Notes under the pieces: model-generated
Databases searched by the model: none
What the model was told of the DNA's origin: nothing
What the model saw: only the letters and a program-made list of their open reading frames with translations
IMG/VR virus record: IMGVR_UViG_3300043446_005562
Span: 186,001-250,000 of that record
Reading direction: 5' to 3' (one strand)
DNA length: 64,000 nucleotides
Made by a program: the position numbers and the translations under genes
Shown: positions 31,698 through 39,196 of the stretch, one piece after another
Layout of the letters: every line of letters starts with the position of its first letter
Numbering within the stretch: position 1 is the first letter of the stretch

Positions 31698-32777
31698 CTA
31701 GTCTCCGCCTTTTAGCAAAAATTTATTTGAGATTACCTTAAACGAAATTGATCTAACCATATTTCGGATTACCAAACCTTCACGCTCCGTACTTTCACAC
31801 AGGGCAGATTTGCCCTCGGCGAACTGCAACAGCTCTTCAATTGTATTGGGCAGTAGAAAATGATTATGAAGCATGGGTACCGTTTCAAGGCCCAATTCAT
31901 TGATCGTTTTTTCCAATTGGGCTTTAATGTAGTACTGATGTTCGTCGATATCGAAGATATTAAAGAACTTCAGAGTTTGACCCTTCAGCCTGTATGGATT
32001 GCCCTGAATTCCTTCACCGATAATCTCTCCTTGAAAGGAAACATTTTTACCAAGACTACGCATCTTTGTCTCAAGATCCAATTCTCTGGCAACCTTCCAC
32101 ATTGTGTTGTCTTCAGTCTCAAGCAGCTCAAGATTTCTAGAACAGATGCCAAATTCGCCATCCTTTACGTAGGCTGTGAAAGAGGATCCATCTAGCTTTT
32201 CAGTAACATAGAAGGAGGTTTTTGTGTAGCCCTCATACTCGTTGGTCAAGTTCTGCACTCGCTCTTCATCTGTTTTTGGAATGAACGATGGAAAAAGACC
32301 CTTGGCCACACCAGCTAATGAAGCCGGTACCGGCGGTTCATACTTAATGATTCCCAAGTGTTTACTTACATCCAATCCTTCTTCAATCACCAGCGCATCA
32401 TCGTAAGGCCCCAGTTGTAGCTGCTCTCCCCATGGCTGTTCACTGACTCCAACGACCATTTCCTCAGCACAGTTTAGAGTTTCAAGCGGTAGGACTAGAC
32501 CTTGCGATACTTGGCCTCTGAGCTTAATCGTCTTTAATCGAAAGCCTTCAGAGCCGTCCGCTAATTTTCGATAGGAACTCTTACGTAAGAACTCAAACTC
32601 CTCCTTTATTGGCAGGAACGAGTCAATTTCGCAATAGATGCACAGATCTCCCGGTTTGTACTCGCCCTTTTTGCAAACGACGTTCCAGTTATTGATCTGT
32701 ACGACTTCAATCACGTCAGCTCCTTCGATCGGTCTAACGTCTCTGACTCTTTGAATACTTGCTAATTTTCTTTCCAT
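31698..32777 (-). CDS. RNA ligase, DRB0094 family
   Basis: RKLASIQ, YCEIDS, IKLRGQVSQG, PKTDEERVQN, TEKLDGSS, QGEIIGEGIQGN, EGLV, FKVISN. Confidence 0.9.
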   Translation of the reverse strand: MERKLASIQRVRDVRPIEGADVIEVVQINNWNVVCKKGEYKPGDLCIYCEIDSFLPIKEEFEFLRKSSYRKLADGSEGFRLKTIKLRGQVSQGLVLPLETLNCAEEMVVGVSEQPWGEQLQLGPYDDALVIEEGLDVSKHLGIIKYEPPVPASLAGVAKGLFPSFIPKTDEERVQNLTNEYEGYTKTSFYVTEKLDGSSFTAYVKDGEFGICSRNLELLETEDNTMWKVARELDLETKMRSLGKNVSFQGEIIGEGIQGNPYRLKGQTLKFFNIFDIDEHQYYIKAQLEKTINELGLETVPMLHNHFLLPNTIEELLQFAEGKSALCESTEREGLVIRNMVRSISFKVISNKFLLKGGD

Positions 32778-32779
32778 TT

Positions 32780-33324
32780 TTATTCTTTGTATATTTCGGC
32801 AAGTTTGCGTTCTATTTCATAACACTTTTCGGATGGAACTCCATCTGCGTAAAATCTAAATGAATTGAACTTGCTCTTGATTTGACTGAACTTAAAATCC
32901 GGTAATTTGCTTAGGCTCTCAAACTCCGCGTCTAAATACTCAATTACTTCCGGTTTATCTAGTGCAAGCCCATAGTGGCCCTTTTTTAAAAAGGCACCCC
33001 ACTTTTTGTTAAACTCATCAGAGGTTGTAGGTTTCATATATCGTTTTTAATAATTTAATTGTACTAAAAAGGCAGTGGTCGGGTTTCCCAATCCGAGTAA
33101 GAGGTCCATTCGACAAGATCGTCAACTTGACCCTCTTCGATCACATGAGCGACCATAATCTCCTGCTTCTCATTCTTTCCGACTGCGACCATTCTGCAGC
33201 CTTCACATAGAACAGGCATGTAAGTATTTGGTTCAAGGGACTCAGCTATTTTCTGAACGTCTATTTCCGGTTCAAAATCTTCGCCCCACATTTCGGTTGC
33301 GCATCGATTACAAAAGTCTGCCAT
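32780..33324 (-). other. Two small hypothetical CDSs (32780-33037; 33064-33324 with CxxC pairs)
   Basis: Co-directional ORFs. Confidence 0.6.
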
Positions 33325-33325
33325 A

Positions 33326-33829
33326 TTATTGTCTGTTTAAAATTTTAAGAGCGTAGCCGTTGATCATAGGTCTGCCTGTGTTATAACAGCCCAGCACCAG
33401 ACCCCAATCGCCGTACTTTTTATAGAGGTTTGAGAGCAGCTTCATTGAGATCTTTACATTTAATTCCAAGTCGTTTAATAGCTGCTTTGAAGTAATTTGT
33501 TTGCCCCAAGTTGCGGTTGCGGTCGGCACCTGAATCTGCATTGCACCGTAGGCATGAGCTGAAGACACAAGTTTTGGATTGTATCCCCAGTCGAATGGGC
33601 CGTGATAGCCGCTTTCAGTTTCAGCAACGCCCATCGCAATGTTGAAGGGTACGTTGTACTGCTTTGAGTAGGTCTGCAGATAATCGTACAGCCTAATACA
33701 AGGTGGCGCTTTTTTTAGTGAAACTTTGGAGAGATCTAGGGTTCTATCCCCGTGCTTAGCTGTTTCGTAAGACCAGGCTGCGCCAAATAATAACAGCACT
33801 CCAAAGATTAGAGTTGATCTTAGTGACAT
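33326..33829 (-). CDS. Lytic transglycosylase (SLT domain) with signal/TM segment
   Basis: AETESG, GAMQI, LGCYNTG. Confidence 0.8.
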   Translation of the reverse strand: MSLRSTLIFGVLLLFGAAWSYETAKHGDRTLDLSKVSLKKAPPCIRLYDYLQTYSKQYNVPFNIAMGVAETESGYHGPFDWGYNPKLVSSAHAYGAMQIQVPTATATWGKQITSKQLLNDLELNVKISMKLLSNLYKKYGDWGLVLGCYNTGRPMINGYALKILNRQ

Positions 33830-34152
33830 TACTTCGCGATTTGGTCATACTTCCTAGAAGCATAAAGGTTAAAAATCATTAGTCCTACCGAATCTTGATA
33901 CACGGTGTAGGTACCGTCCGCTCTATCGATTACAAGAAGTTCATTGCGCTCGTTGATCGCAACTGAGGTTGTGGATAGAGGTTTTGTATTCTTAAGTGGG
34001 GATTTCTTTGCGTGACTCATCATTACCCAATAGTAATAGCCAATAAAGAATCCAGTTATCATTGCGACCGCAACAATAAGCAGATTACCAAGTTTCTTTG
34101 CAAAGACGTTTAAACGAGCCAATGCATTCGTGATCATGAGTTTCTTGTCCAT
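33829..34152 (-). CDS. Single-TM hypothetical protein
   Basis: LLIVAVAMITGFFIGYYYW. Confidence 0.6.
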   Translation of the reverse strand: MDKKLMITNALARLNVFAKKLGNLLIVAVAMITGFFIGYYYWVMMSHAKKSPLKNTKPLSTTSVAINERNELLVIDRADGTYTVYQDSVGLMIFNLYASRKYDQIAK

Positions 34153-34208
34153 AACTTTGTTTTATAGGTTTAAAACTATTATACTAAAAAATGGGGCGAG
34201 CGGTCTTT

Positions 34209-34589
34209 TTAGTATTCTTTTGGACTTTCGATGTCCTTTAAGTCTGGAAATTTAGTGTACAGTTTATGATAGATTCTGTCAAATCTGCGATCCTGATCCC
34301 GTTGAAATCGATCGCCCGCTTCAAATACATTGCGCTGAATGTTTGATTGTTCTTCTCGAATGGATCTAAATTCCCATTCAAGATTCTTTCGAATCTCTTC
34401 AGTGTTCTCTTCCAATCTTCGATAAAGATCTTCCCGAACTGAATGAAGTGTGTTAGCAAGACCTGTTAGATCATTACTTAATTGATTGTTGATTGCTTGT
34501 GCCTTACGTAACCCCAACCCAATCCATCCAAGATAGATTACGGCCAAAGTGCCTAGTACGCTCAACACGACAGTTGAAATTATTGTCAT
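34209..34589 (-). CDS. N-terminal TM plus coiled-coil protein flanked by a 10-bp inverted repeat
   Basis: Hydrophobic N-terminus; TGGGGCGAGC/GCTCGCCCCA at 34192-34201 and 34610-34619. Confidence 0.6.
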   Translation of the reverse strand: MTIISTVVLSVLGTLAVIYLGWIGLGLRKAQAINNQLSNDLTGLANTLHSVREDLYRRLEENTEEIRKNLEWEFRSIREEQSNIQRNVFEAGDRFQRDQDRRFDRIYHKLYTKFPDLKDIESPKEY

Positions 34590-34651
34590 ATATTTAGGGT
34601 GTTTTTAGTGCTCGCCCCAAATATTTTACTCTATCGTAAACTTAGGTTTTG

Positions 34652-35506
34652 TTAAAAGCCGTTGGTTGAAGTGTTATAAAAAACTTTACCAGTCACGTCG
34701 GTCGTCTTGGTGATGGTCGGCGTTGAATAGTTAAAGGTTAATACATCACCGCCTGTGTTCTCTCCGAATTGAATTCTAATTGGATAATAAGTGCCGGACG
34801 TTAAAGCAACTGAGCCGGATCTTTCAACCGTTCCATGGAGTCCTCCATTATTCACAGTTGCATTGCCTGTGGTAAAGCCGCTAATTGCATTACTTCCAAC
34901 CCAAACATAGGAAGCATCATCGCTTGATGTGTAAAAGGTATAGGTTTCAGTCGTAGTTGGTTTAAAATAACCCAACCATTGACAACTAAATACTTCTCCA
35001 TCATTTGAGGATGGTTCGGAAATCACTGTAGTTTGAACTGATGTTGCCGGGTTAGCACCGAATGTCGTTGGCGTAGCGGTCGCAAAAAAGCTTACGTTAT
35101 CACTAAAATATCCAGAATAGGTTGTTTTGTAGAGACCCGCTGCATACGGTACAAATGTTGTAAAATAATTATTGGTATTCAACCAATCATACGCCAATTG
35201 AGCTGTTGCAAAGGGTCCACTTGCGCCAGCAACAGCATTTGCAATACTTAAAAAACTTGCATCTGTCAAGCTACTCGATCTCCAAAAACCAACGGTTCCG
35301 TTGTTCAGGCCGTTTGGTGTGGGCTGATTTGCTGCAGCAACGTCCTTTGCGATAATATAGCCCAGTGATTCGTCTGGACCCATCCACCAGGTAAGACCGG
35401 TCGCGCCAAAGCCGGCGCTTGGGGTACCGTATGCCAGGTTTCCAAGCTGGGTTGTTCCGCCGATTGCGGCGCCAGTATTACGAGTGAAGGGTCGTGATGT
35501 TGCCAT
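34652..35506 (-). CDS. PA14/GLEYA-domain protein (putative virion or surface carbohydrate-binding protein)
   Basis: WLGYFKP...YTFYTSSDDASYVWVG...GTYYPIRIQFGENTGG; AATAAATA upstream. Confidence 0.75.
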   Translation of the reverse strand: MATSRPFTRNTGAAIGGTTQLGNLAYGTPSAGFGATGLTWWMGPDESLGYIIAKDVAAANQPTPNGLNNGTVGFWRSSSLTDASFLSIANAVAGASGPFATAQLAYDWLNTNNYFTTFVPYAAGLYKTTYSGYFSDNVSFFATATPTTFGANPATSVQTTVISEPSSNDGEVFSCQWLGYFKPTTTETYTFYTSSDDASYVWVGSNAISGFTTGNATVNNGGLHGTVERSGSVALTSGTYYPIRIQFGENTGGDVLTFNYSTPTITKTTDVTGKVFYNTSTNGF

Positions 35507-35531
35507 CCAGTAACTAGATCTTTCTAGTTAT

Positions 35532-36623
35532 TTATTCTTCTTGATTCCAGAAAGGTTTTTGATAATCTGGTCGAATCTGCTTCCAGATCTGCTGACTGGG
35601 ATCCCGACCGTTCAGCAAGCAGAATAGGGTGCTCCAAGCGGTTTGCGGAACATTTTCTTGAATCCACAAGGCCTCGTCCTTTCTGGTCTTGAAACCCTGT
35701 TCAGATAATTGATTTAGATAATTTTGCGCAGACCTCATTCGCATGACATGTGCAACTTTTAGGGCAGCCTCCCACTGTCTAACCCATGCATCAAATTCAT
35801 CGGGCACCATCTCTAAAAATTGATCAAGTTCTTCGCCCCGGCTCAGGTGCTCCCAAATATCGACATTAGAAAAATTGGTCAAGAGCCGGTGCAATCGAAC
35901 GTATTCTTCGAATTTAATCTTCATTCTAAAATTTCCGGGCTGGAATCTTAGAACAAAACCTTCAGCCTTTCTAGTATTCATGGCCTTTAGGCTTTCATAG
36001 AGTTCAGGACTAAAATTAAAATGTTGCTCAGTTTTTACCAGATCAGATTTGCTAATTCCGTTTGACCTAAAAAAAGCGCACGCGGTTGTCCAGTGCAATT
36101 CAGTACCCTCAGAGATGGCGCTCAGAAAAACCACCCTGGGCTTGGAACCGTAATCAACAACTATACGATTCTTGGGATAGATGATTTCGCACAAGTAGGT
36201 TACTCGACGCTCAAATTGACGTAGTCCAAAATATTTCTCTTTTAGAATTTTTAAACCCTCAACTGCCTGATCCGAATGAAATGAACCTCGAGTGGCCATG
36301 TGCCAGGCGTCAGCATAATAGAATAGAATTCCCAATGAGCCGTCCATTTTTTGCTGCACATAAACGTAATCACCTTTGACTGGAATTTGACCAGTCTGCG
36401 CAGCCTCCTCGTAATTAAAGAATTTATTGAAACCCCTAGCCACAATCTCGCCTGAATCATCCATGATGAGACCTCGACACTGTAGAGTCACTTCATCCCA
36501 TGCCGAATCGTATTGGCATTTTCTAGAGTAATTGTAAATTGTCAACGGTAATTTGTTATGCCGATTGGCAACGACCAATCCACGGTTGACGTAATCCTTT
36601 AAGATAGTTTGAGTTAGGGTCAT
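35532..36623 (-). CDS. T4 Rnl1-like RNA ligase
   Basis: IYNYS, CRGLI, RGFNKFFN, QKMDGSLG, ATRGSF, EII, EGFV, KIKFEEY. Confidence 0.9.
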   Translation of the reverse strand: MTLTQTILKDYVNRGLVVANRHNKLPLTIYNYSRKCQYDSAWDEVTLQCRGLIMDDSGEIVARGFNKFFNYEEAAQTGQIPVKGDYVYVQQKMDGSLGILFYYADAWHMATRGSFHSDQAVEGLKILKEKYFGLRQFERRVTYLCEIIYPKNRIVVDYGSKPRVVFLSAISEGTELHWTTACAFFRSNGISKSDLVKTEQHFNFSPELYESLKAMNTRKAEGFVLRFQPGNFRMKIKFEEYVRLHRLLTNFSNVDIWEHLSRGEELDQFLEMVPDEFDAWVRQWEAALKVAHVMRMRSAQNYLNQLSEQGFKTRKDEALWIQENVPQTAWSTLFCLLNGRDPSQQIWKQIRPDYQKPFWNQEE

Positions 36624-37028
36624 TTATAATTTAATTTCAAAACGAGCTCTCATCTGCTCTACTTTTTCAGCCGGCACTCCATGAGAATTAATGCCACCGT
36701 GCCTATTTTCAACAATGATTGAGAAAACTCGATAGTTCCATTCCTTTGCTAAATCGTAATAGGCTTGCATTTCCCACTCTTGAGTAAATGTATTCGAGAC
36801 CACAATCACGGAATTTTGACCGGTTGTGTGATTTAGTATCATGGCGGTTTCCACATCACCATAACACCACTGATGAGCCTCCTTTAATTTAGAGGCATCG
36901 AATCGATATTCGCTATTCTCATCCAAGAAAAATCTGTCTGTTTCAAAATGAGAACCTCCAAGCTCTTTAGCTAGTGTTGATTTGCCCGCACCCGGCAAAC
37001 CTCGTAAAAGAAATAGTGTCTTTGTCAT
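36624..37028 (-). CDS. Polynucleotide 5'-kinase-like P-loop protein (AAA_33), no phosphatase domain
   Basis: RGLPGAGKST, ETDRFF, VSNTF, HGVP. Confidence 0.8.
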   Translation of the reverse strand: MTKTLFLLRGLPGAGKSTLAKELGGSHFETDRFFLDENSEYRFDASKLKEAHQWCYGDVETAMILNHTTGQNSVIVVSNTFTQEWEMQAYYDLAKEWNYRVFSIIVENRHGGINSHGVPAEKVEQMRARFEIKL

Positions 37029-37059
37029 GCTATTTTAGTTAATGATATTATACTAAAAG

Positions 37060-37141
37060 TGGGAGTAGGTGGACTCGAACCACCGAACTCAGAAGAGGAG
37101 GGATTTACAGTCCCTTGCAATTGCCGCTATGCGATACTCCC
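37060..37141 (-). tRNA. tRNA-Tyr(GUA)
   Basis: AGGGA-CTGTAAA-TCCCT, type II. Confidence 0.95.
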
Positions 37142-37281
37142 AAAATAAGGAAAGGGGAAGATGGTTGTGTGGACGACCCCTTTTACGATTGGCTTTACTC
37201 TGCTAATGATCTGCCAACTCCGATGCTGCCAGTCGACCATTAGTCTCAAACTATTGACAGCTCATTCCCCAATCAACCTTG

Positions 37282-37356
37282 TCGGGGTGGCAGGATTCGA
37301 ACCTACGACCTCCTGCTCCCAAAGCAGGCGCGATAACCGGACTACGCTACACCCCG
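37282..37356 (-). tRNA. tRNA-Pro(UGG)
   Basis: CCTGC-TTTGGGA-GCAGG. Confidence 0.95.
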
Positions 37357-37438
37357 AAAATCAATACGCTTTCGCCCCCTGTATGGCGTATTACTGATGC
37401 TTAAGGTCGGCCTTAACCGTTAAGGGAGCCACCAGTTG

Positions 37439-37511
37439 AGCGGATGGCGAGAATCGAACTCGCATCTCCAGCTTGGAAGGCTGGAGTAATAAGCCATTAT
37501 ACGACATCCGC
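37439..37511 (-). tRNA. tRNA-Gly(UCC)
   Basis: CCAGC-CTTCCAA-GCTGG, U73. Confidence 0.95.
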
Positions 37512-37518
37512 TTATTTG

Positions 37519-37591
37519 AGCGGGAGACCGGGTTCGAACCGGCGACCTCAACCTTGGCAAGGTTGCGCTCTACCAACTGAGCTACTCCCGC
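37519..37591 (-). tRNA. tRNA-Gly(GCC)
   Basis: CAACC-TTGCCAA-GGTTG, U73. Confidence 0.95.
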
Positions 37592-37595
37592 AATT

Positions 37596-37776
37596 GGGTA
37601 GGATCAGACGTGTTCTGCCTACTAGGCAGGTCTGCCTACCGAGACCTCGTCGTTAACTTTCGTCAGAGCGTACCGAGACACCATTTGTTTTTCGACTTGA
37701 GGTAGTCACGGCCGCCTCTGGTCCTCTCAAGTCTATTTCGTATCGTGGCAAGATGCGGCTCGACCCTGATACGCTG
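37596..37776 (-). ncRNA. Candidate structured ncRNA between tRNA-Thr and tRNA-Gly
   Basis: Multiple helices, including GACTTGAG/CTCAAGTC and GGTAGG/CCTACC. Confidence 0.5.
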
Positions 37777-37778
37777 TG

Positions 37779-37851
37779 AGCCTCCTGCCGGGATCGAACC
37801 AGCGACCTACTGATTACAAATCAGTTGCTCTACCAGCTGAGCTAAGGAGGC
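37779..37851 (-). tRNA. tRNA-Thr(UGU)
   Basis: ACTGA-TTTGTAA-TCAGT. Confidence 0.95.
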
Positions 37852-37934
37852 AAGATGAACCGTCACAGTGGTTCAGTCTGGTCATTTTCTTCTTCAGTCA
37901 TCGGTAAACCGCGACCTTCTGACGGTGACATCCA

Positions 37935-38011
37935 TGGTGGACCGTGAGAGACTCGAACTCTCGACCCCCTGCGTGCAAGGCAGGTGCTCTAGCCAACTGA
38001 GCTAACAGCCC
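37935..38011 (-). tRNA. tRNA-Ala(UGC)
   Basis: CCTGC-CTTGCAC-GCAGG, G3:U70, CCA. Confidence 0.95.
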
Positions 38012-38017
38012 ATTTTG

Positions 38018-38089
38018 TAGCCCGTACGAGAATCGAACTCGTCTCTCATCCGTGAAAGGGATGCGTCCTAACCGATAGACTAACGGGCC
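38018..38089 (-). tRNA. tRNA-Glu(UUC)
   Basis: CATCC-CTTTCAC-GGATG. Confidence 0.95.
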
Positions 38090-38211
38090 AAATAAAAACA
38101 TAATACTACTTTAATAGCGCTTACCCAATTTTACAACAGAGCGCGTTACCTTGCTAGACCGTTATTGGGCAACGACTTCTAACAATCCTACCTACCCATA
38201 TTATGTTTTTG

Positions 38212-38283
38212 CGGTCCCACCGGGAATCGAACCCGGCACTTTGCCGTGACAGGGCAATATTATAGCCGATTAACTATGAGACC
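38212..38283 (-). tRNA. tRNA-Asp(GUC)
   Basis: TTGCC-CTGTCAC-GGCAA, G73. Confidence 0.95.
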
Positions 38284-38289
38284 TTTTGC

Positions 38290-38480
38290 TCCTTATAAAT
38301 CCTTCCCGTGCACAGAACAAGAAACTGGGGAGACGTTGTTTCTACTTTTATGAAAGGCTTGGGTACCCTCTCCCACCGTTTCGCAGGTTGAAGCGTCCAT
38401 CTCCACGCCGTCCCTGTGGAACTACAGTGGCTGGTTGTTGCGGCATGCTGCGCTGTGATGGAACATTCGCACAAGCATTG
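38290..38480 (-). ncRNA. Candidate structured ncRNA between tRNA-fMet and tRNA-Asp
   Basis: At least five complementary pairs plus a possible pseudoknot. Confidence 0.55.
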
Positions 38481-38482
38481 AC

Positions 38483-38557
38483 TGGTTGCGGGTGCTGGAA
38501 TCGAACCAGCGATCTTTGGGTTATGAGCCCAACGAGTTACCATTTCTCCGACCCGCG
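38483..38557 (-). tRNA. Initiator tRNA-fMet(CAU)
   Basis: C1:A72 mismatch, three G-C pairs in TTGGG-CTCATAA-CCCAA, CCA. Confidence 0.95.
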
Positions 38558-38562
38558 ATGTG

Positions 38563-38633
38563 TTGTCCCGCAAGGATTCGAACCTCAATTCTCTGGACCA
38601 AAACCAGATGTGCTGCCGTTACACCACAGGACA
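38563..38633 (-). tRNA. tRNA-Gln(UUG)
   Basis: TCTGG-TTTTGGT-CCAGA. Confidence 0.93.
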
Positions 38634-38704
38634 ATTTACTATCTCCAATACGTCAAAGAACCTAATTCTCTTTGTATAGAATATTATACTATATTCCAGA
38701 GATC

Positions 38705-38778
38705 TGGCACGAGTGGAGAGATTCGAACTCCCATCAACGGTTTTGGAGACCGGTATGCTACCATTGCACCACACACGT
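38705..38778 (-). tRNA. tRNA-Trp(CCA)
   Basis: CCGGT-CTCCAAA-ACCGT, CCA end. Confidence 0.92.
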
Positions 38779-38782
38779 ATTT

Positions 38783-38859
38783 TGGTTGGAATAGTAGGAT
38801 TTGAACCTACGACCTCATGAGTATCAGTCATGCGCTCTAACCAACTGAGCTATATTCCA
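38783..38859 (-). tRNA. tRNA-Ile(GAU)
   Basis: CATGA-CTGATAC-TCATG, CCA end. Confidence 0.93.
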
Positions 38860-38862
38860 ATT

Positions 38863-38938
38863 TGGTGGTGCGGGGCAGGATCGAACTGCCGACACCAGGA
38901 TTTTCAGTCCTGTGCTCTACCGTCTGAGCTACCGCACC
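38863..38938 (-). tRNA. tRNA-Phe(GAA)
   Basis: CAGGA-CTGAAAA-TCCTG, CCA end. Confidence 0.95.
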
Positions 38939-38942
38939 GGGT

Positions 38943-38978
38943 AAAACAAAAAACCTCGAATTTTTTAGGTTCGAGGTT
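38943..38978 (-). terminator. Intrinsic terminator immediately upstream of the large tRNA array
   Basis: AACCTCGAA/TTCGAGGTT stem plus TTTTGTTTT. Confidence 0.85.
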
Positions 38979-39002
38979 CAGTGTTTCGTAGTTAATATTT
39001 CC

Positions 39003-39134
39003 TTAACTTAATCCGCTTGAACCTCGCAATGCCCCAAAATCTTTAATCGCTTCCGTTGCATTCACAGTAATTGTGCCTGCCGGATACTGATTCCAGTTTT
39101 GAGAAATTTTTGATGTGTTCGCGTAGTTTTGCAC
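39003..39134 (-). CDS. Putative attenuator leader peptide (43 aa, GTG start)
   Basis: MQNYANTSKISQNWNQYPAGTITVNATEAIKDFGALRGSSGLS; two promoter-like motifs upstream; contains the antiterminator segment. Confidence 0.7.
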   Translation of the reverse strand: MQNYANTSKISQNWNQYPAGTITVNATEAIKDFGALRGSSGLS

Positions 39135-39196
39135 GGTTTAAGTTTTTTGTCTAGTTATTTATAAAGCTATTATACCAACTTTTCGGAAAAAGGTTC

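What the first reader, a model, noticed from the sequence alone, without database searches (positions are those of the whole stretch)
37596..37776. About 180-nt structured RNA candidate between tRNA-Thr and tRNA-Gly
Seen on the minus strand: CGTATC/GATACG; a perfect 8-bp GACTTGAG/CTCAAGTC; TGAC-GAAA-GTTA GNRA hairpin; nested GGTAGG-CAGA...TCTG-AT-CCTACC enclosing CTGCCT/AGGCAG; and a direct repeat GTCTCGGTA x2. There are alternative pairings (GGTAGG with CCTGCC or CCTACC). No plausible ORF. Inference: a stable or switchable ncRNA.
Basis: partly seen in the sequence, partly recalled or inferred. Interest (0 to 1): 0.6.

Follow-up and report, generated by a model that had tools for sequence, protein, structure and literature searches.

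The report
Two new phage tRNA-array RNAs
The gap between two tRNA genes of this uncultured freshwater jumbo phage holds two separate, strongly conserved folded RNAs that match no catalogued family, adding new members to the poorly understood small RNAs that phages embed in their tRNA gene clusters.

Summary
Folding energy alone is weak evidence (z = -2.1 for the whole spacer, -1.6 to +0.1 for its parts). Comparative evidence is decisive.

The 186-nt spacer is two independent modules on the minus strand, not one 180-nt RNA.

- **Module A** (37694-37777) is two hairpins joined by a 5-bp loop-loop pseudoknot. In 15 distinct sequences, 15 of 21 pairs show compensatory changes.
- **Module B** (37596-37681) is a 69-nt core with an irregular 5' hairpin of near-constant sequence and a freely covarying 3' hairpin. 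This phage also carries a lineage-specific 17-nt insertion. More than 70 distinct sequences are over 99% paired.

Module B occurs in about 90 IMG/VR and 70 metagenome contigs, mostly from fresh water. It was not found in 185,579 prokaryotic genomes, GenBank phages or Rfam. In 78% of contexts a tRNA starts 4-10 nt after it, and that tRNA is usually tRNA-Gly.

My best reading is that both are small RNAs cut out of the tRNA precursor by tRNA-processing enzymes and then act in trans, like T4 species 1 and 2 RNAs. Their function is unknown. The proposed switch is not supported, because its alternative pairings are lineage-specific.

The parts
37778..37851 (-). tRNA-Thr(tgt), the upstream neighbour. 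Module A starts directly after its 3' end.
   Evidence: ARAGORN; Rfam tRNA model at 69.5 bits.
37694..37777 (-). Module A: an 84-nt RNA made of two hairpins (a1, a2) whose loops pair with each other.
   Evidence: Model R2 scores 106 bits here. 15 distinct homologues are 96.6% paired, and 15 of 21 pairs show double changes.
37739..37773 (-). Hairpin a1. The stem is CGUAUC (37773-37768) with GAUACG (37744-37739), plus GG/CC. The 16-nt loop carries GCCGC.
   Evidence: Sequence. The stem varies to CAUAUU/GAUAUG, UAUAAC/GGUUAUA, UUUAGU/GACUAAA and GAUGUAA/UUACAUC.
37755..37759 (-). 5' strand of the pseudoknot: GCCGC in the a1 loop, pairing with 37711-37715.
   Evidence: Variants GCCGU/ACGGC, GCCAG/CUGGC, ACCAC/GUGGU and GCCAC/GUGGC. 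This helix is 100% paired, and 3 of its 5 pairs show double changes.
37711..37715 (-). 3' strand of the pseudoknot: GCGGC in the 24-nt a2 loop.
37694..37733 (-). Hairpin a2. The 8-bp stem is GACUUGAG/CUCAAGUC. The loop holds the conserved AGGAUYAGAG and CGUGACUAC.
   Evidence: 7 of 8 pairs covary, for example GGUGAAGA/UCUUCACC, GAGUCAGA/UCUGACUC and GAUAAACA/UGUUUAUC.
37682..37693 (-). 12-nt A-rich linker between modules A and B. Its sequence is variable.
   Evidence: Alignment A1.
37596..37681 (-). Module B: the 69-nt family core plus a 17-nt insertion, 86 nt in this phage.
   Evidence: Model R1 scores 88.8 bits. This is the only copy in the 252.6-kb genome.
37644..37679 (-). 5' domain of module B. 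P1 is GUCUCG/CGAGGU, with conserved G-U and U-G pairs. An irregular internal region follows (GGUA, CG/CG, CUC/A). P2 is UGAC-GAAA-GUUA.
   Evidence: P1 C-G changes to U-A in 16 of 44 and 10 of 29 distinct sequences, and G-C changes to A-U in 2. The P2 tip varies in length and carries GNRA or UUCG loops.
37597..37640 (-). Hairpin P3 of module B. GGUAGG/CCUACC (6 bp), an AU bulge, CAGA/UCUG (4 bp), and a variable tip.
   Evidence: 9 of 10 pairs show double changes in A3 and 7 of 10 in A6. The helix is over 99% paired.
37614..37630 (-). Lineage-specific 17-nt insertion CCUGCCUAGUAGGCAGA in the P3 tip.
   Evidence: Absent from L002, L003 and most members. Similar inserts occur in L068, L125, L150, L207 and L227.
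37592..37595 (-). 4-nt spacer AAUU before the mature 5' end of tRNA-Gly. This is the inferred RNase P site that would set module B's 3' end.
   Evidence: The spacing is 4-10 nt in 73 of 94 contexts. Cleavage itself is inferred, not shown.
37518..37591 (-). tRNA-Gly(gcc), the downstream neighbour.
   Evidence: ARAGORN; Rfam tRNA model at 71.2 bits.

Best explanation
The Thr-Gly spacer encodes two independent small structured RNAs. Module A is an 84-nt double hairpin locked by a loop-loop pseudoknot. Module B has a 69-nt core: an irregular 5' hairpin of near-constant sequence followed by a covarying 3' hairpin.

Both are transcribed on the minus strand as part of the polycistronic tRNA precursor of a freshwater jumbo phage. 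I propose they are released as discrete molecules by the enzymes that mature their tRNA neighbours. RNase P would cut at the 5' end of the tRNA that follows module B by 4-6 nt, and 3'-end processing of the preceding tRNA would free the 5' side. The released RNAs would then act in trans as stable folded RNAs. Their conserved unpaired nucleotides (B's internal loops, A's loop segments) would be the contact surface for a conserved partner, protein or RNA.

**Shown:** the structures, their conservation, the strand, the modularity, the position in tRNA arrays, and the absence from known families.

**Inferred:** co-transcription, excision by tRNA-processing enzymes, stability, action in trans, and the existence of a partner. 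The partner and the biological role remain unknown.
For: **Real structure, module B**
- 99.1-99.5% of cells are paired.
- 8 of 20, 12 of 20 and 11 of 20 pairs show changes on both sides in three alignments.
- 0 of 500 shuffles reach the observed values, and pairing collapses to 26-60% when partners are slid by 1-3 columns.

**Real structure, module A**
- 96.6% paired, with 15 of 21 pairs showing double changes.
- The 5-bp pseudoknot is 100% paired.

**Conservation**
- The RNA is 92-95% identical where the neighbouring Rnl1 protein is only 59-82% identical.

**Strand**
- The conserved G-U and U-G pairs in P1 and P2 would be A-C mismatches on the other strand.

**Modularity**
-.

**Position in the tRNA array**
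- Both modules sit on the same strand as 14 tRNAs.
- No promoter-like or terminator-like site lies inside the spacer.
- A tRNA begins 4-10 nt after module B in 73 of 94 distinct contexts.
- A tRNA ends 2-7 nt before it in about 20 contexts.
- Where no tRNA follows (L058, L078), P3 is followed by a T-run that would end the transcript there.

**Precedent**
- T4 annotates two 'small, stable RNAs' (rnaC, rnaD), 1-6 nt apart, directly after tRNA-Arg.

**Presence in an RNA library**
- A 216-nt contig at depth 29 from a riverine metatranscriptome covers 37567-37764.

**Not coding**
- Insertions of 6, 7, 10 and 17 nt sit at hairpin tips, and variation follows the stems rather than codons.
Against: - No ends, abundance or processing were observed. 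The RNA-library data are assembled contigs only, and DNA carry-over is not excluded.
- In 70 of 91 contexts no tRNA lies just upstream of module B. There it often follows an ORF or another spacer module, so its 5' end is not explained by tRNA processing.
- The tight, constant spacing to the downstream tRNA and the bias to tRNA-Gly (54 of 73) could equally mean a cis role for that tRNA.
- No partner has been identified. Rnl1 is missing from one complete genome that holds both modules, and no Ro/TROVE gene is in this genome.
- Much of the apparent invariance of B's core is partly built in by the exact patterns used to collect members. Relaxed scans did reveal variation at positions 9-11 and 27.
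Confidence: 0.55

Rival explanations
1. Module B is a cis-acting 5' leader of the downstream tRNA, above all tRNA-Gly. It would control that tRNA's folding, its RNase P maturation, or the stability of the precursor, and would have no role of its own after cleavage.
For: - A tRNA starts 4-10 nt after module B (mostly 4-6) in 73 of 94 contexts, and 54 of these are tRNA-Gly with anticodon tcc, gcc or acc.
- Module B often opens an array with no tRNA upstream.
- The nucleotide before the tRNA is usually U. From my own knowledge this suits bacterial RNase P.
Against: - The downstream tRNA-Gly genes differ widely in sequence, and Leu, Asp, Thr, Met, Val and Tyr tRNAs also follow.
- In about 20 contexts no recognised tRNA follows. 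What follows instead is a T-run in L058 and L078, or another conserved module in L109, L123, L124 and L161.
- A plain leader would not need about 40 near-constant nucleotides.
Confidence: 0.2
2. One or both modules are a new class of self-cleaving ribozyme that helps to cut up the long tRNA precursor.
For: - Both have compact, pseudoknotted or irregular folds with highly conserved unpaired nucleotides and conserved G-U pairs.
- They sit at processing junctions of a polycistronic RNA.
- RNA-end repair genes, a kinase and two ligases, lie 0.6-6 kb away.
Against: - No Rfam ribozyme model matches, even at E up to 10 on 201 nt.
- By eye, the hammerhead-like CUGACGA lies inside the covarying helix P2, and no HDV-like P2 partner exists. 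This is inference.
- RNase P already accounts for the downstream cut.
- Rnl1 is absent from the complete record G002, which has both modules.
Confidence: 0.07
3. One reading: a single RNA of about 180 nt that switches between alternative pairings.
For: - In this phage the two modules are adjacent.
- GGTAGG can pair with either CCTACC or CCTGCC, and GTCTCGGTA occurs twice.
- The minimum-free-energy fold of the whole spacer mixes the two halves.
Against: - The modules occur apart, alone and in reverse order.
- CCTGCC lies in a 17-nt insertion that most members lack.
- When P1 changes C-G to U-A, the second 'repeat' copy stays unchanged.
- No cross-module pairs covary.
Confidence: 0.03
4. The conserved sequence acts at the DNA level, as a promoter or operator, a recombination site or a homing site in tRNA arrays. 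Alternatively it is a decayed tRNA gene with no function.
For: - Sequence conservation of B's 5' domain is extreme.
- Module B often sits at array borders.
- Arrays are visibly shuffled between phages.
Against: - Compensatory changes preserve hairpins.
- G-U pairs are tolerated on one strand only.
- Insertions are hairpin-shaped.
- ARAGORN and the Rfam tRNA model find nothing tRNA-like there.
Confidence: 0.03

Closest known systems
Phage T4 species 1 and species 2 stable RNAs (rnaC, rnaD)
   Same: Both are small non-tRNA RNAs encoded inside a phage tRNA gene cluster. They lie on the tRNA strand and are packed 1-6 nt from their neighbours, so they occupy a tRNA-sized slot. Their function is still unknown (T4 annotation).
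   Different: There is no sequence or structure homology: models R1 and R2 find nothing in T4. T4 rnaC ends in a tRNA-like T-arm (GGTTCGAATCC), whereas modules A and B have no tRNA-like arm. The sizes are 139 and 119 nt against 84 and 69 nt.
GOLLD, ROOL and freshwater-1 RNA motifs (Rfam RF02032, RF03087, RF02979)
   Same: These are phage and metagenome RNAs of unknown function found at tRNA islands (PMC12286853). GOLLD (243 bits) and freshwater-1 (71 bits, 1 bit under its cut-off) lie in the same array as module B in L071. Freshwater-1 at 67-69 bits, also just under the cut-off, lies in the arrays of G002 and G003.
   Different: The candidate matches none of these models. GOLLD and freshwater-1 were not found in this phage's genome. 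GOLLD and ROOL are 5-10 times larger and form multimeric cages. The folds of A and B differ from them.
Spacer-derived small RNAs of bacterial tRNA operons (for example 3'ETS-leuZ of E. coli; from my own knowledge, not tested here)
   Same: They are functional RNAs released as by-products of tRNA precursor processing.
   Different: Those act as short, mostly unstructured sponges that base-pair with Hfq-dependent sRNAs. A and B are compact folded RNAs, and no complementary target has been identified.
Bacterial Y RNA-like YrlA (RF02553)
   Same: It is a phage- and bacterium-encoded ncRNA that can sit among tRNAs and next to RNA-repair genes. A weak YrlA-like hit (39 bits, cut-off 69) lies just upstream of module B in L058.
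   Different: In the window, YrlA hits fall only on true tRNAs and lie far below the cut-off. There is no Ro/TROVE gene in this genome. Neither A nor B has a tRNA-like domain or a long terminal stem.

Membership tests
tRNA (RF00005) | Cloverleaf fold detectable by ARAGORN or the Rfam tRNA covariance model. | tested here: not met
   ARAGORN makes no call in 37592-37777. The tRNA model gives no hit even at E up to 10 on 201 nt.
T4 rnaC/rnaD stable RNAs | Encoded within a phage tRNA cluster, on the same strand, with tRNA-like spacing. | tested here: met
T4 rnaC/rnaD stable RNAs | Sequence or structure homology to rnaC or rnaD. | tested here: not met
   R1 with filters off on the T4 tRNA region scores at most 4.2 bits. 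R1 and R2 find nothing in the whole T4 genome, while the positive control G002 is found.
T4 rnaC/rnaD stable RNAs | Accumulates as a discrete processed stable RNA during infection. | not testable with these tools
   Only assembled contigs of RNA libraries were available. One 216-nt contig covers 37567-37764, but no ends are visible.
GOLLD / ROOL | Match to the Rfam covariance model; size above 500 nt. | tested here: not met
   No hit in the window or the spacer. GOLLD gives no hit in the whole genome, although that search had no positive control. The modules are 84 and 69-86 nt long.
freshwater-1 RNA (RF02979) | Match to the Rfam covariance model. | tested here: not met
   No hit in the spacer or in G000. 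The motif lies elsewhere in related arrays: G002:190345-190406 and L071:2378-2440.
Known self-cleaving ribozymes (hammerhead, twister, twister-sister, pistol, hatchet, HDV-like) | Match to the family model and its conserved catalytic core. | tested here: not met
   No Rfam hit at E up to 10. CUGACGA lies inside the covarying helix P2. Catalytic activity itself cannot be tested here.
Riboswitch or other switching cis-regulator | An aptamer followed by an expression platform with conserved, mutually exclusive pairings upstream of a regulated gene. | tested here: not met
   A tRNA follows, not an ORF. There is no terminator in the window. The alternative pairings are not conserved.
YrlA / Y RNA-like | A tRNA-like domain plus a Ro-binding stem, and a Ro (TROVE) gene in the genome. 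| tested here: not met
   No TROVE match in G000. YrlA model hits in the window fall on tRNAs at 25 bits or less, against a cut-off of 69.

The most novel reading that the evidence does not exclude
Module B, possibly together with module A, is a new kind of functional RNA that takes over tRNA metabolism during infection. It could be a structured leader that captures or redirects RNase P or another tRNA-binding host factor, such as a tRNA-targeting defence nuclease. Or it could be a new ribozyme class that processes the phage's own tRNA precursor. The tRNA islands of freshwater jumbo phages would then carry a toolkit of at least four such RNAs: modules A and B plus two further conserved spacers (C and D), alongside freshwater-1 and GOLLD.
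Probability: 0.12. Interest if true: 0.85.

Novelty: new variant of a known kind. Interest (0 to 1): 0.62.

Why it matters
Phage tRNA islands are known to hold enigmatic RNAs: T4 species 1 and 2 since the 1970s, and GOLLD, ROOL and freshwater-1 more recently. None has an established function.

This finding adds two small motifs with very strong covariation support, one of them with a clean loop-loop pseudoknot. They occur in more than 100 uncultured phage contigs. Module B has an unusually strict position 4-6 nt ahead of a tRNA, usually tRNA-Gly.

Their small size makes them easy to study by in vitro RNase P assays, structure probing, pull-downs and structure determination. They could therefore be an entry point to what phages do with non-tRNA RNAs in tRNA arrays. 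They also deserve their own covariance models, so that such spacers stop being annotated as empty.

Tried and rejected
**Searches that found nothing**
- Rfam at gathering score on the window, at E up to 10 on 2.4 kb, and at E up to 10 on 201 nt. The only hit was a chance snoRNA match at 12 bits.
- blastn of the spacer against 50,697 GenBank phages. Megablast of the array hit only tRNAs.
- An exact 26-mer from the window's P3 in IMG/VR. That stretch is lineage-specific.
- The module B core pattern in 185,579 prokaryotic genomes.
- R1 on 54 loci chosen by Rnl1 or module A rather than by module B.
- R1 and R2 on T4, Lak-B1 and two huge uncultured phages.

**Ideas tested and dropped**
- A link to Ro/Y RNA: no TROVE gene in this genome.
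- An obligate link to RNA ligase Rnl1: it is absent from the complete record G002, which has both modules.
- An obligate link between A and B: module B is present without A in G001, G003, G004 and G005.
- GOLLD in this genome: none found, but that search had no positive control.
- Thermodynamic stability as evidence: z-scores of only -2.1 to +0.1.

**Considered by eye and rejected (inference only)**
- For module B: a hammerhead, an HDV-like fold, a kink-turn, group II intron domain V, SRP domain IV, a permuted or split tRNA, and an acceptor/T minihelix.
- For module A: a T-arm or a hammerhead.
- Base-pairing of B's CGCUCUG/GUACG with the D-arm region of neighbouring tRNA-like elements is possible in some loci but not general.

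**Limits of other tools**
- Literature searches found no description of these motifs. One search failed on a term that was too short.
- Laying reads gave contigs only, so no RNA ends. Most depth over the array comes from conserved tRNAs of other organisms.

Full report
**1. The observation**

Folding energy alone is weak evidence:
- The whole spacer folds at -60.7 kcal/mol, z = -2.10, with 6 of 200 dinucleotide shuffles as good.
- The plus strand gives z = -0.58.
- The two halves give z = -1.58 and -1.01.
- The commonest 69-nt form of module B, taken from another contig, gives z = +0.08.

The case therefore rests on comparison with relatives.

**2. Setting**

The window is part of a 252.6-kb IMG/VR virus record estimated to be 93% complete. 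It encodes a portal protein, DNA polymerase, helicases, topoisomerase II and a large ATP-dependent protease. The portal's nearest relatives are uncultured huge phages and the Lak megaphages, at 33-39% amino-acid identity.

The spacer lies in a run of 14 same-strand tRNA genes (37059-38938). No promoter-like or terminator-like site lies inside the spacer. Just downstream on the same strand are three RNA-end repair genes:
- a small Pnk-like AAA_33 kinase (36624-37028);
- a T4 Rnl1-type RNA ligase (35532-36623);
- a second RNA ligase (31698-32777).

**3. Relatives, and the split into two modules**

- Loci fetched through the Rnl1 protein gave two relatives, L002 and L003, with the same Thr-spacer-Gly arrangement. 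The first 147 nt of the spacer are 92-95% identical, although Rnl1 is only 82% and 59% identical.
- Exact scans with conserved stretches found 34 and 12 IMG/VR contigs. They also found 70 metagenome contigs, mostly freshwater with a few labelled marine, and none of 185,579 prokaryotic genomes.
- nhmmer showed that most contigs match only the 3' half of the spacer and that two (L093, L094) match only the 5' half.

The spacer is therefore two modules: A (37694-37777) and B (37596-37681).

**4. Module B**

The family core is 69 nt:

GUGUCUYG-NNN-CGCUCUG-[P2 tip]-YAACGA-YRAGGUC-YCG-[P3]-C

| Helix | Pairing | Notes |
|---|---|---|
| P1 | GUCUYG / YRAGGU | Includes a G-U and a U-G pair that never vary |
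| Inner pairs | CG / CG | Two invariant pairs, flanked by 3-by-1 internal loops |
| P2 | 4 bp | Tip may be GAAA, GCAA, UUCG or a longer hairpin |
| P3 | 6 bp, A(U) bulge, 4 bp | Follows a 3-nt CYC linker; tip is variable |

Pair counts:

| Alignment | Sequences | Cells paired | Pairs with changes on both sides | Shuffles reaching observed | Paired when slid 1-3 columns |
|---|---|---|---|---|---|
| A2 | 16 | 99.1% | 8 of 20 | 0 of 500 | 26-52% |
| A3 | 44 distinct | 99.3% | 12 of 20 | 0 of 500 | 26-60% |

Much of the invariance of the core was imposed by the exact patterns used for collection. I therefore scanned with each half alone and kept the 56 new loci that model R1 confirmed. These show real variation at positions 9-11 (GUA, GUC, AUC, UUC, UUU, GAA), a U27-to-C change that turns a G-U into a G-C, and a G8-C33 to A-U change. 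The fold is again 99.5% paired, with 11 of 20 pairs showing double changes. The covarying positions of P3, the P2 tip and module A were never part of any search pattern.

The G-U pairs fix the transcribed strand as that of the tRNAs.

The window's copy carries a 17-nt insertion (37614-37630) that forms an extra hairpin in the P3 tip. A few other members have similar inserts, but most have none.

The alternative partner CCTGCC is in the insertion. The second GTCTCGGTA copy does not follow the first when P1 changes.

This genome holds one copy of module B. Locus L158 holds two.

**5. Module A**

Module A is two hairpins separated by AAAUA:
- Hairpin a1 has a 6-7 bp stem, then GG/CC, then a 16-nt loop.
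- Hairpin a2 has an 8-bp stem and a 24-nt loop.
- GCCGC in the a1 loop pairs with GCGGC in the a2 loop.

That pseudoknot covaries: GCCGU/ACGGC, GCCAG/CUGGC, ACCAC/GUGGU and GCCAC/GUGGC.

Model R2 found 21 full-length copies (and one end fragment), among them several divergent ones at 53-65 bits. Over 15 distinct sequences the fold is 96.6% paired, and 15 of 21 pairs show double changes. The pseudoknot is 100% paired, with 3 of its 5 pairs changed on both sides (the 9-sequence version is).

The conserved unpaired stretches are (A/U)GGGUCRNSCC, AUUNUGCCA, AGGAUYAGAG and CGUGACUAC.

**6. Independence of A and B**

The two modules take different arrangements in different lineages:
- Adjacent, in the window's clade.
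- About 140 nt apart in L098, L104 and L149.
- In the order B, tRNA-Gly, then A in L065, L111 and L152.
- 0.7 kb apart in L130 and 7 kb apart in L113.
- A alone, before a terminator, in L093 and L094.

Four large records that hold B gave no A. They are estimated to be 38-83% complete.

**7. Position relative to tRNAs**

Over 94 distinct contexts of plus or minus 200 nt (earlier version):
- A tRNA begins 4-10 nt after the last base of module B in 73, mostly at 4-6 nt.
- 54 of those tRNAs are tRNA-Gly (tcc 32, gcc 19, acc 3). The rest are Leu, Asp, Thr, Met, Val or Tyr.
- A tRNA ends within 12 nt upstream in only 21.

Otherwise module B follows an ORF, a terminator-like hairpin or another conserved spacer. 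Where no tRNA follows, one of three things is found:
- P3 is followed by a T-run (L058, L078).
- Another conserved module follows.
- A long tRNA-like element that ARAGORN does not call follows.

Module B therefore behaves as a unit that occupies a tRNA-sized slot just ahead of a tRNA. Module A likewise starts right after a tRNA and is followed by B, by a tRNA or by a terminator.

**8. Expression**

Only assembled contigs of RNA libraries were available. In one riverine metatranscriptome, a 216-nt contig at depth 29 lies on 37567-37764, covering A, B and the start of tRNA-Gly, with 6 mismatches and 4 gap positions. Contigs identical to another spacer of this array (38296-38463) occur in two such libraries. 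This shows presence in RNA libraries. It shows neither ends nor strand, and it does not exclude DNA carry-over.

**9. What it is not**

- **tRNA:** not called by ARAGORN or the Rfam tRNA model.
- **Any Rfam 15 family:** no match.
- **T4 rnaC/rnaD:** not homologous.
- **GOLLD or freshwater-1:** not a match. These motifs do share arrays with module B elsewhere (L071, G002, G003). Neither was found in this genome.
- **Y RNA-like:** no TROVE gene, and model hits fall only on tRNAs.
- **Coding:** insertions of 6 to 17 nt sit at hairpin tips, and variation follows stems.
- **A riboswitch-type switch:** no conserved alternative pairing, no terminator, and no downstream ORF.

**10. Mechanism**

The best-supported account is that both modules are small RNAs carried in the tRNA precursor and set free by tRNA maturation. 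RNase P cleavage at the next tRNA would define B's 3' end a few nucleotides past P3.

The pattern in module B points to a specific, conserved partner that is not yet known. Its 5' hairpin has an almost fixed sequence, with conserved wobble pairs and asymmetric loops. Its 3' hairpin varies freely, and both hairpin tips vary in length. Module A's equal-length hairpins with kissing loops point to a rigid compact fold.

I put 0.95 on 'real, conserved structured RNAs' and about 0.55 on the whole processing-and-trans-action account.

The main rival, at 0.2, is a purely cis role of module B for the downstream tRNA, which the fixed spacing and the tRNA-Gly bias favour. A new ribozyme gets 0.07.

**11. 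Novelty**

The kind is known: non-tRNA RNAs inside phage tRNA islands (the T4 species 1 and 2 RNAs; GOLLD and ROOL in PMC12286853; freshwater-1 in Rfam). The two families are new by every search available here, and their folds differ from the known ones.

At least two more conserved spacers with compensatory changes lie in the same array, at 37142-37280 and 37357-37437. This tRNA island is therefore dense with undescribed RNAs.

Noticed in passing
window 37142-37280 (-): The 139-nt spacer between tRNA-Pro and tRNA-Tyr is a third conserved structured element ('module C'). It has 13 distinct variants with visible compensatory changes, for example GGGG...CCCC changing to GAGA...UCUC and CAGA...UCUG. 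In L109, L124, L132 and L161 it lies directly upstream of module B.
   Followed up: partly
window 37357-37437 (-): The 81-nt spacer between tRNA-Gly(tcc) and tRNA-Pro is conserved in 16 loci with 5 distinct variants. It shows compensatory changes in two hairpins (UUAAGG/CCUUAA to GUGG/CCAC, and AAUACGC/GCGUAUU to GACACGU/GCGUGUC). It may be a fourth module.
   Followed up: partly
window 38939-39196 (-): The 258 nt upstream of the first tRNA of the array (tRNA-Phe) are conserved in 16 loci, with E down to 7e-62. This could be a promoter and leader region, a small ORF, or another RNA.
   Followed up: no
window 38284-38482 (-): The 199-nt spacer between tRNA-Met and tRNA-Asp has no homologue in the fetched loci. 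Contigs identical to 38296-38463 and 38289-38464 occur in two riverine RNA libraries.
   Followed up: no
window 31698-37028 (-): An RNA-end repair gene set lies next to the tRNA array: a Pnk-like AAA_33 kinase (36624-37028), an Rnl1-type RNA ligase (35532-36623) and a second RNA ligase with a PHA02142 OB-fold domain (31698-32777). This suggests a counter-measure against host tRNA nucleases.
   Followed up: partly
L071:4079-4509 and L071:2378-2440; G002:C1:190345-190406; G003:C1:80576-80637: A GOLLD RNA (243 bits) and a freshwater-1 RNA (71 bits, 1 bit under the cut-off) sit in the same tRNA array as module B in L071. Freshwater-1 at 67-69 bits is also in the arrays of G002, about 400 nt upstream of module A, and G003. 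Neither motif was found in this window's genome.
   Followed up: partly
L105, L165, L071/L073, L106/L121/L153 (flanks of module B); L058:852-966: Elements of 100-130 nt have a tRNA-like acceptor stem, D-arm and T-arm (GGTTCGAATCC) but a long insert. ARAGORN does not call them. One gives a weak YrlA-like Rfam hit (39 bits, cut-off 69).
   Followed up: no
L003:1194-1271, L007:4045-4116, L004:2775-2847, L006:605-677, L165: Relatives carry tRNAs with stop-reading anticodons: tta, tca (called SeC) and cta (called Pyl). This hints at stop-codon recoding or suppression in part of this phage group. None was seen in the window.
   Followed up: no
L152:7911-8278 and L065:6774-7159: tmRNA genes (68-71 bits, above the cut-off) lie in tRNA arrays that also hold modules A and B.
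   Followed up: no
window 34652-35506 (-): A 284-aa protein with PA14 and GLEYA carbohydrate-binding domains lies next to the RNA ligase gene. It may be an adhesin or a tail-fibre-related protein.
   Followed up: no
upstream of module B in L068, L107, L112, L146, L151, L160 (and further upstream in L058/L078): A recurring element precedes module B: a short hairpin followed by a tRNA D-arm-like AGCTCAGTTGGTAGAGC, then ACGTAYAAAAASCCCATCCTGTTATTTT. Its AGAG..CGTAC segment is complementary to B's GTACGCTCT. This is unexplained.
   Followed up: no
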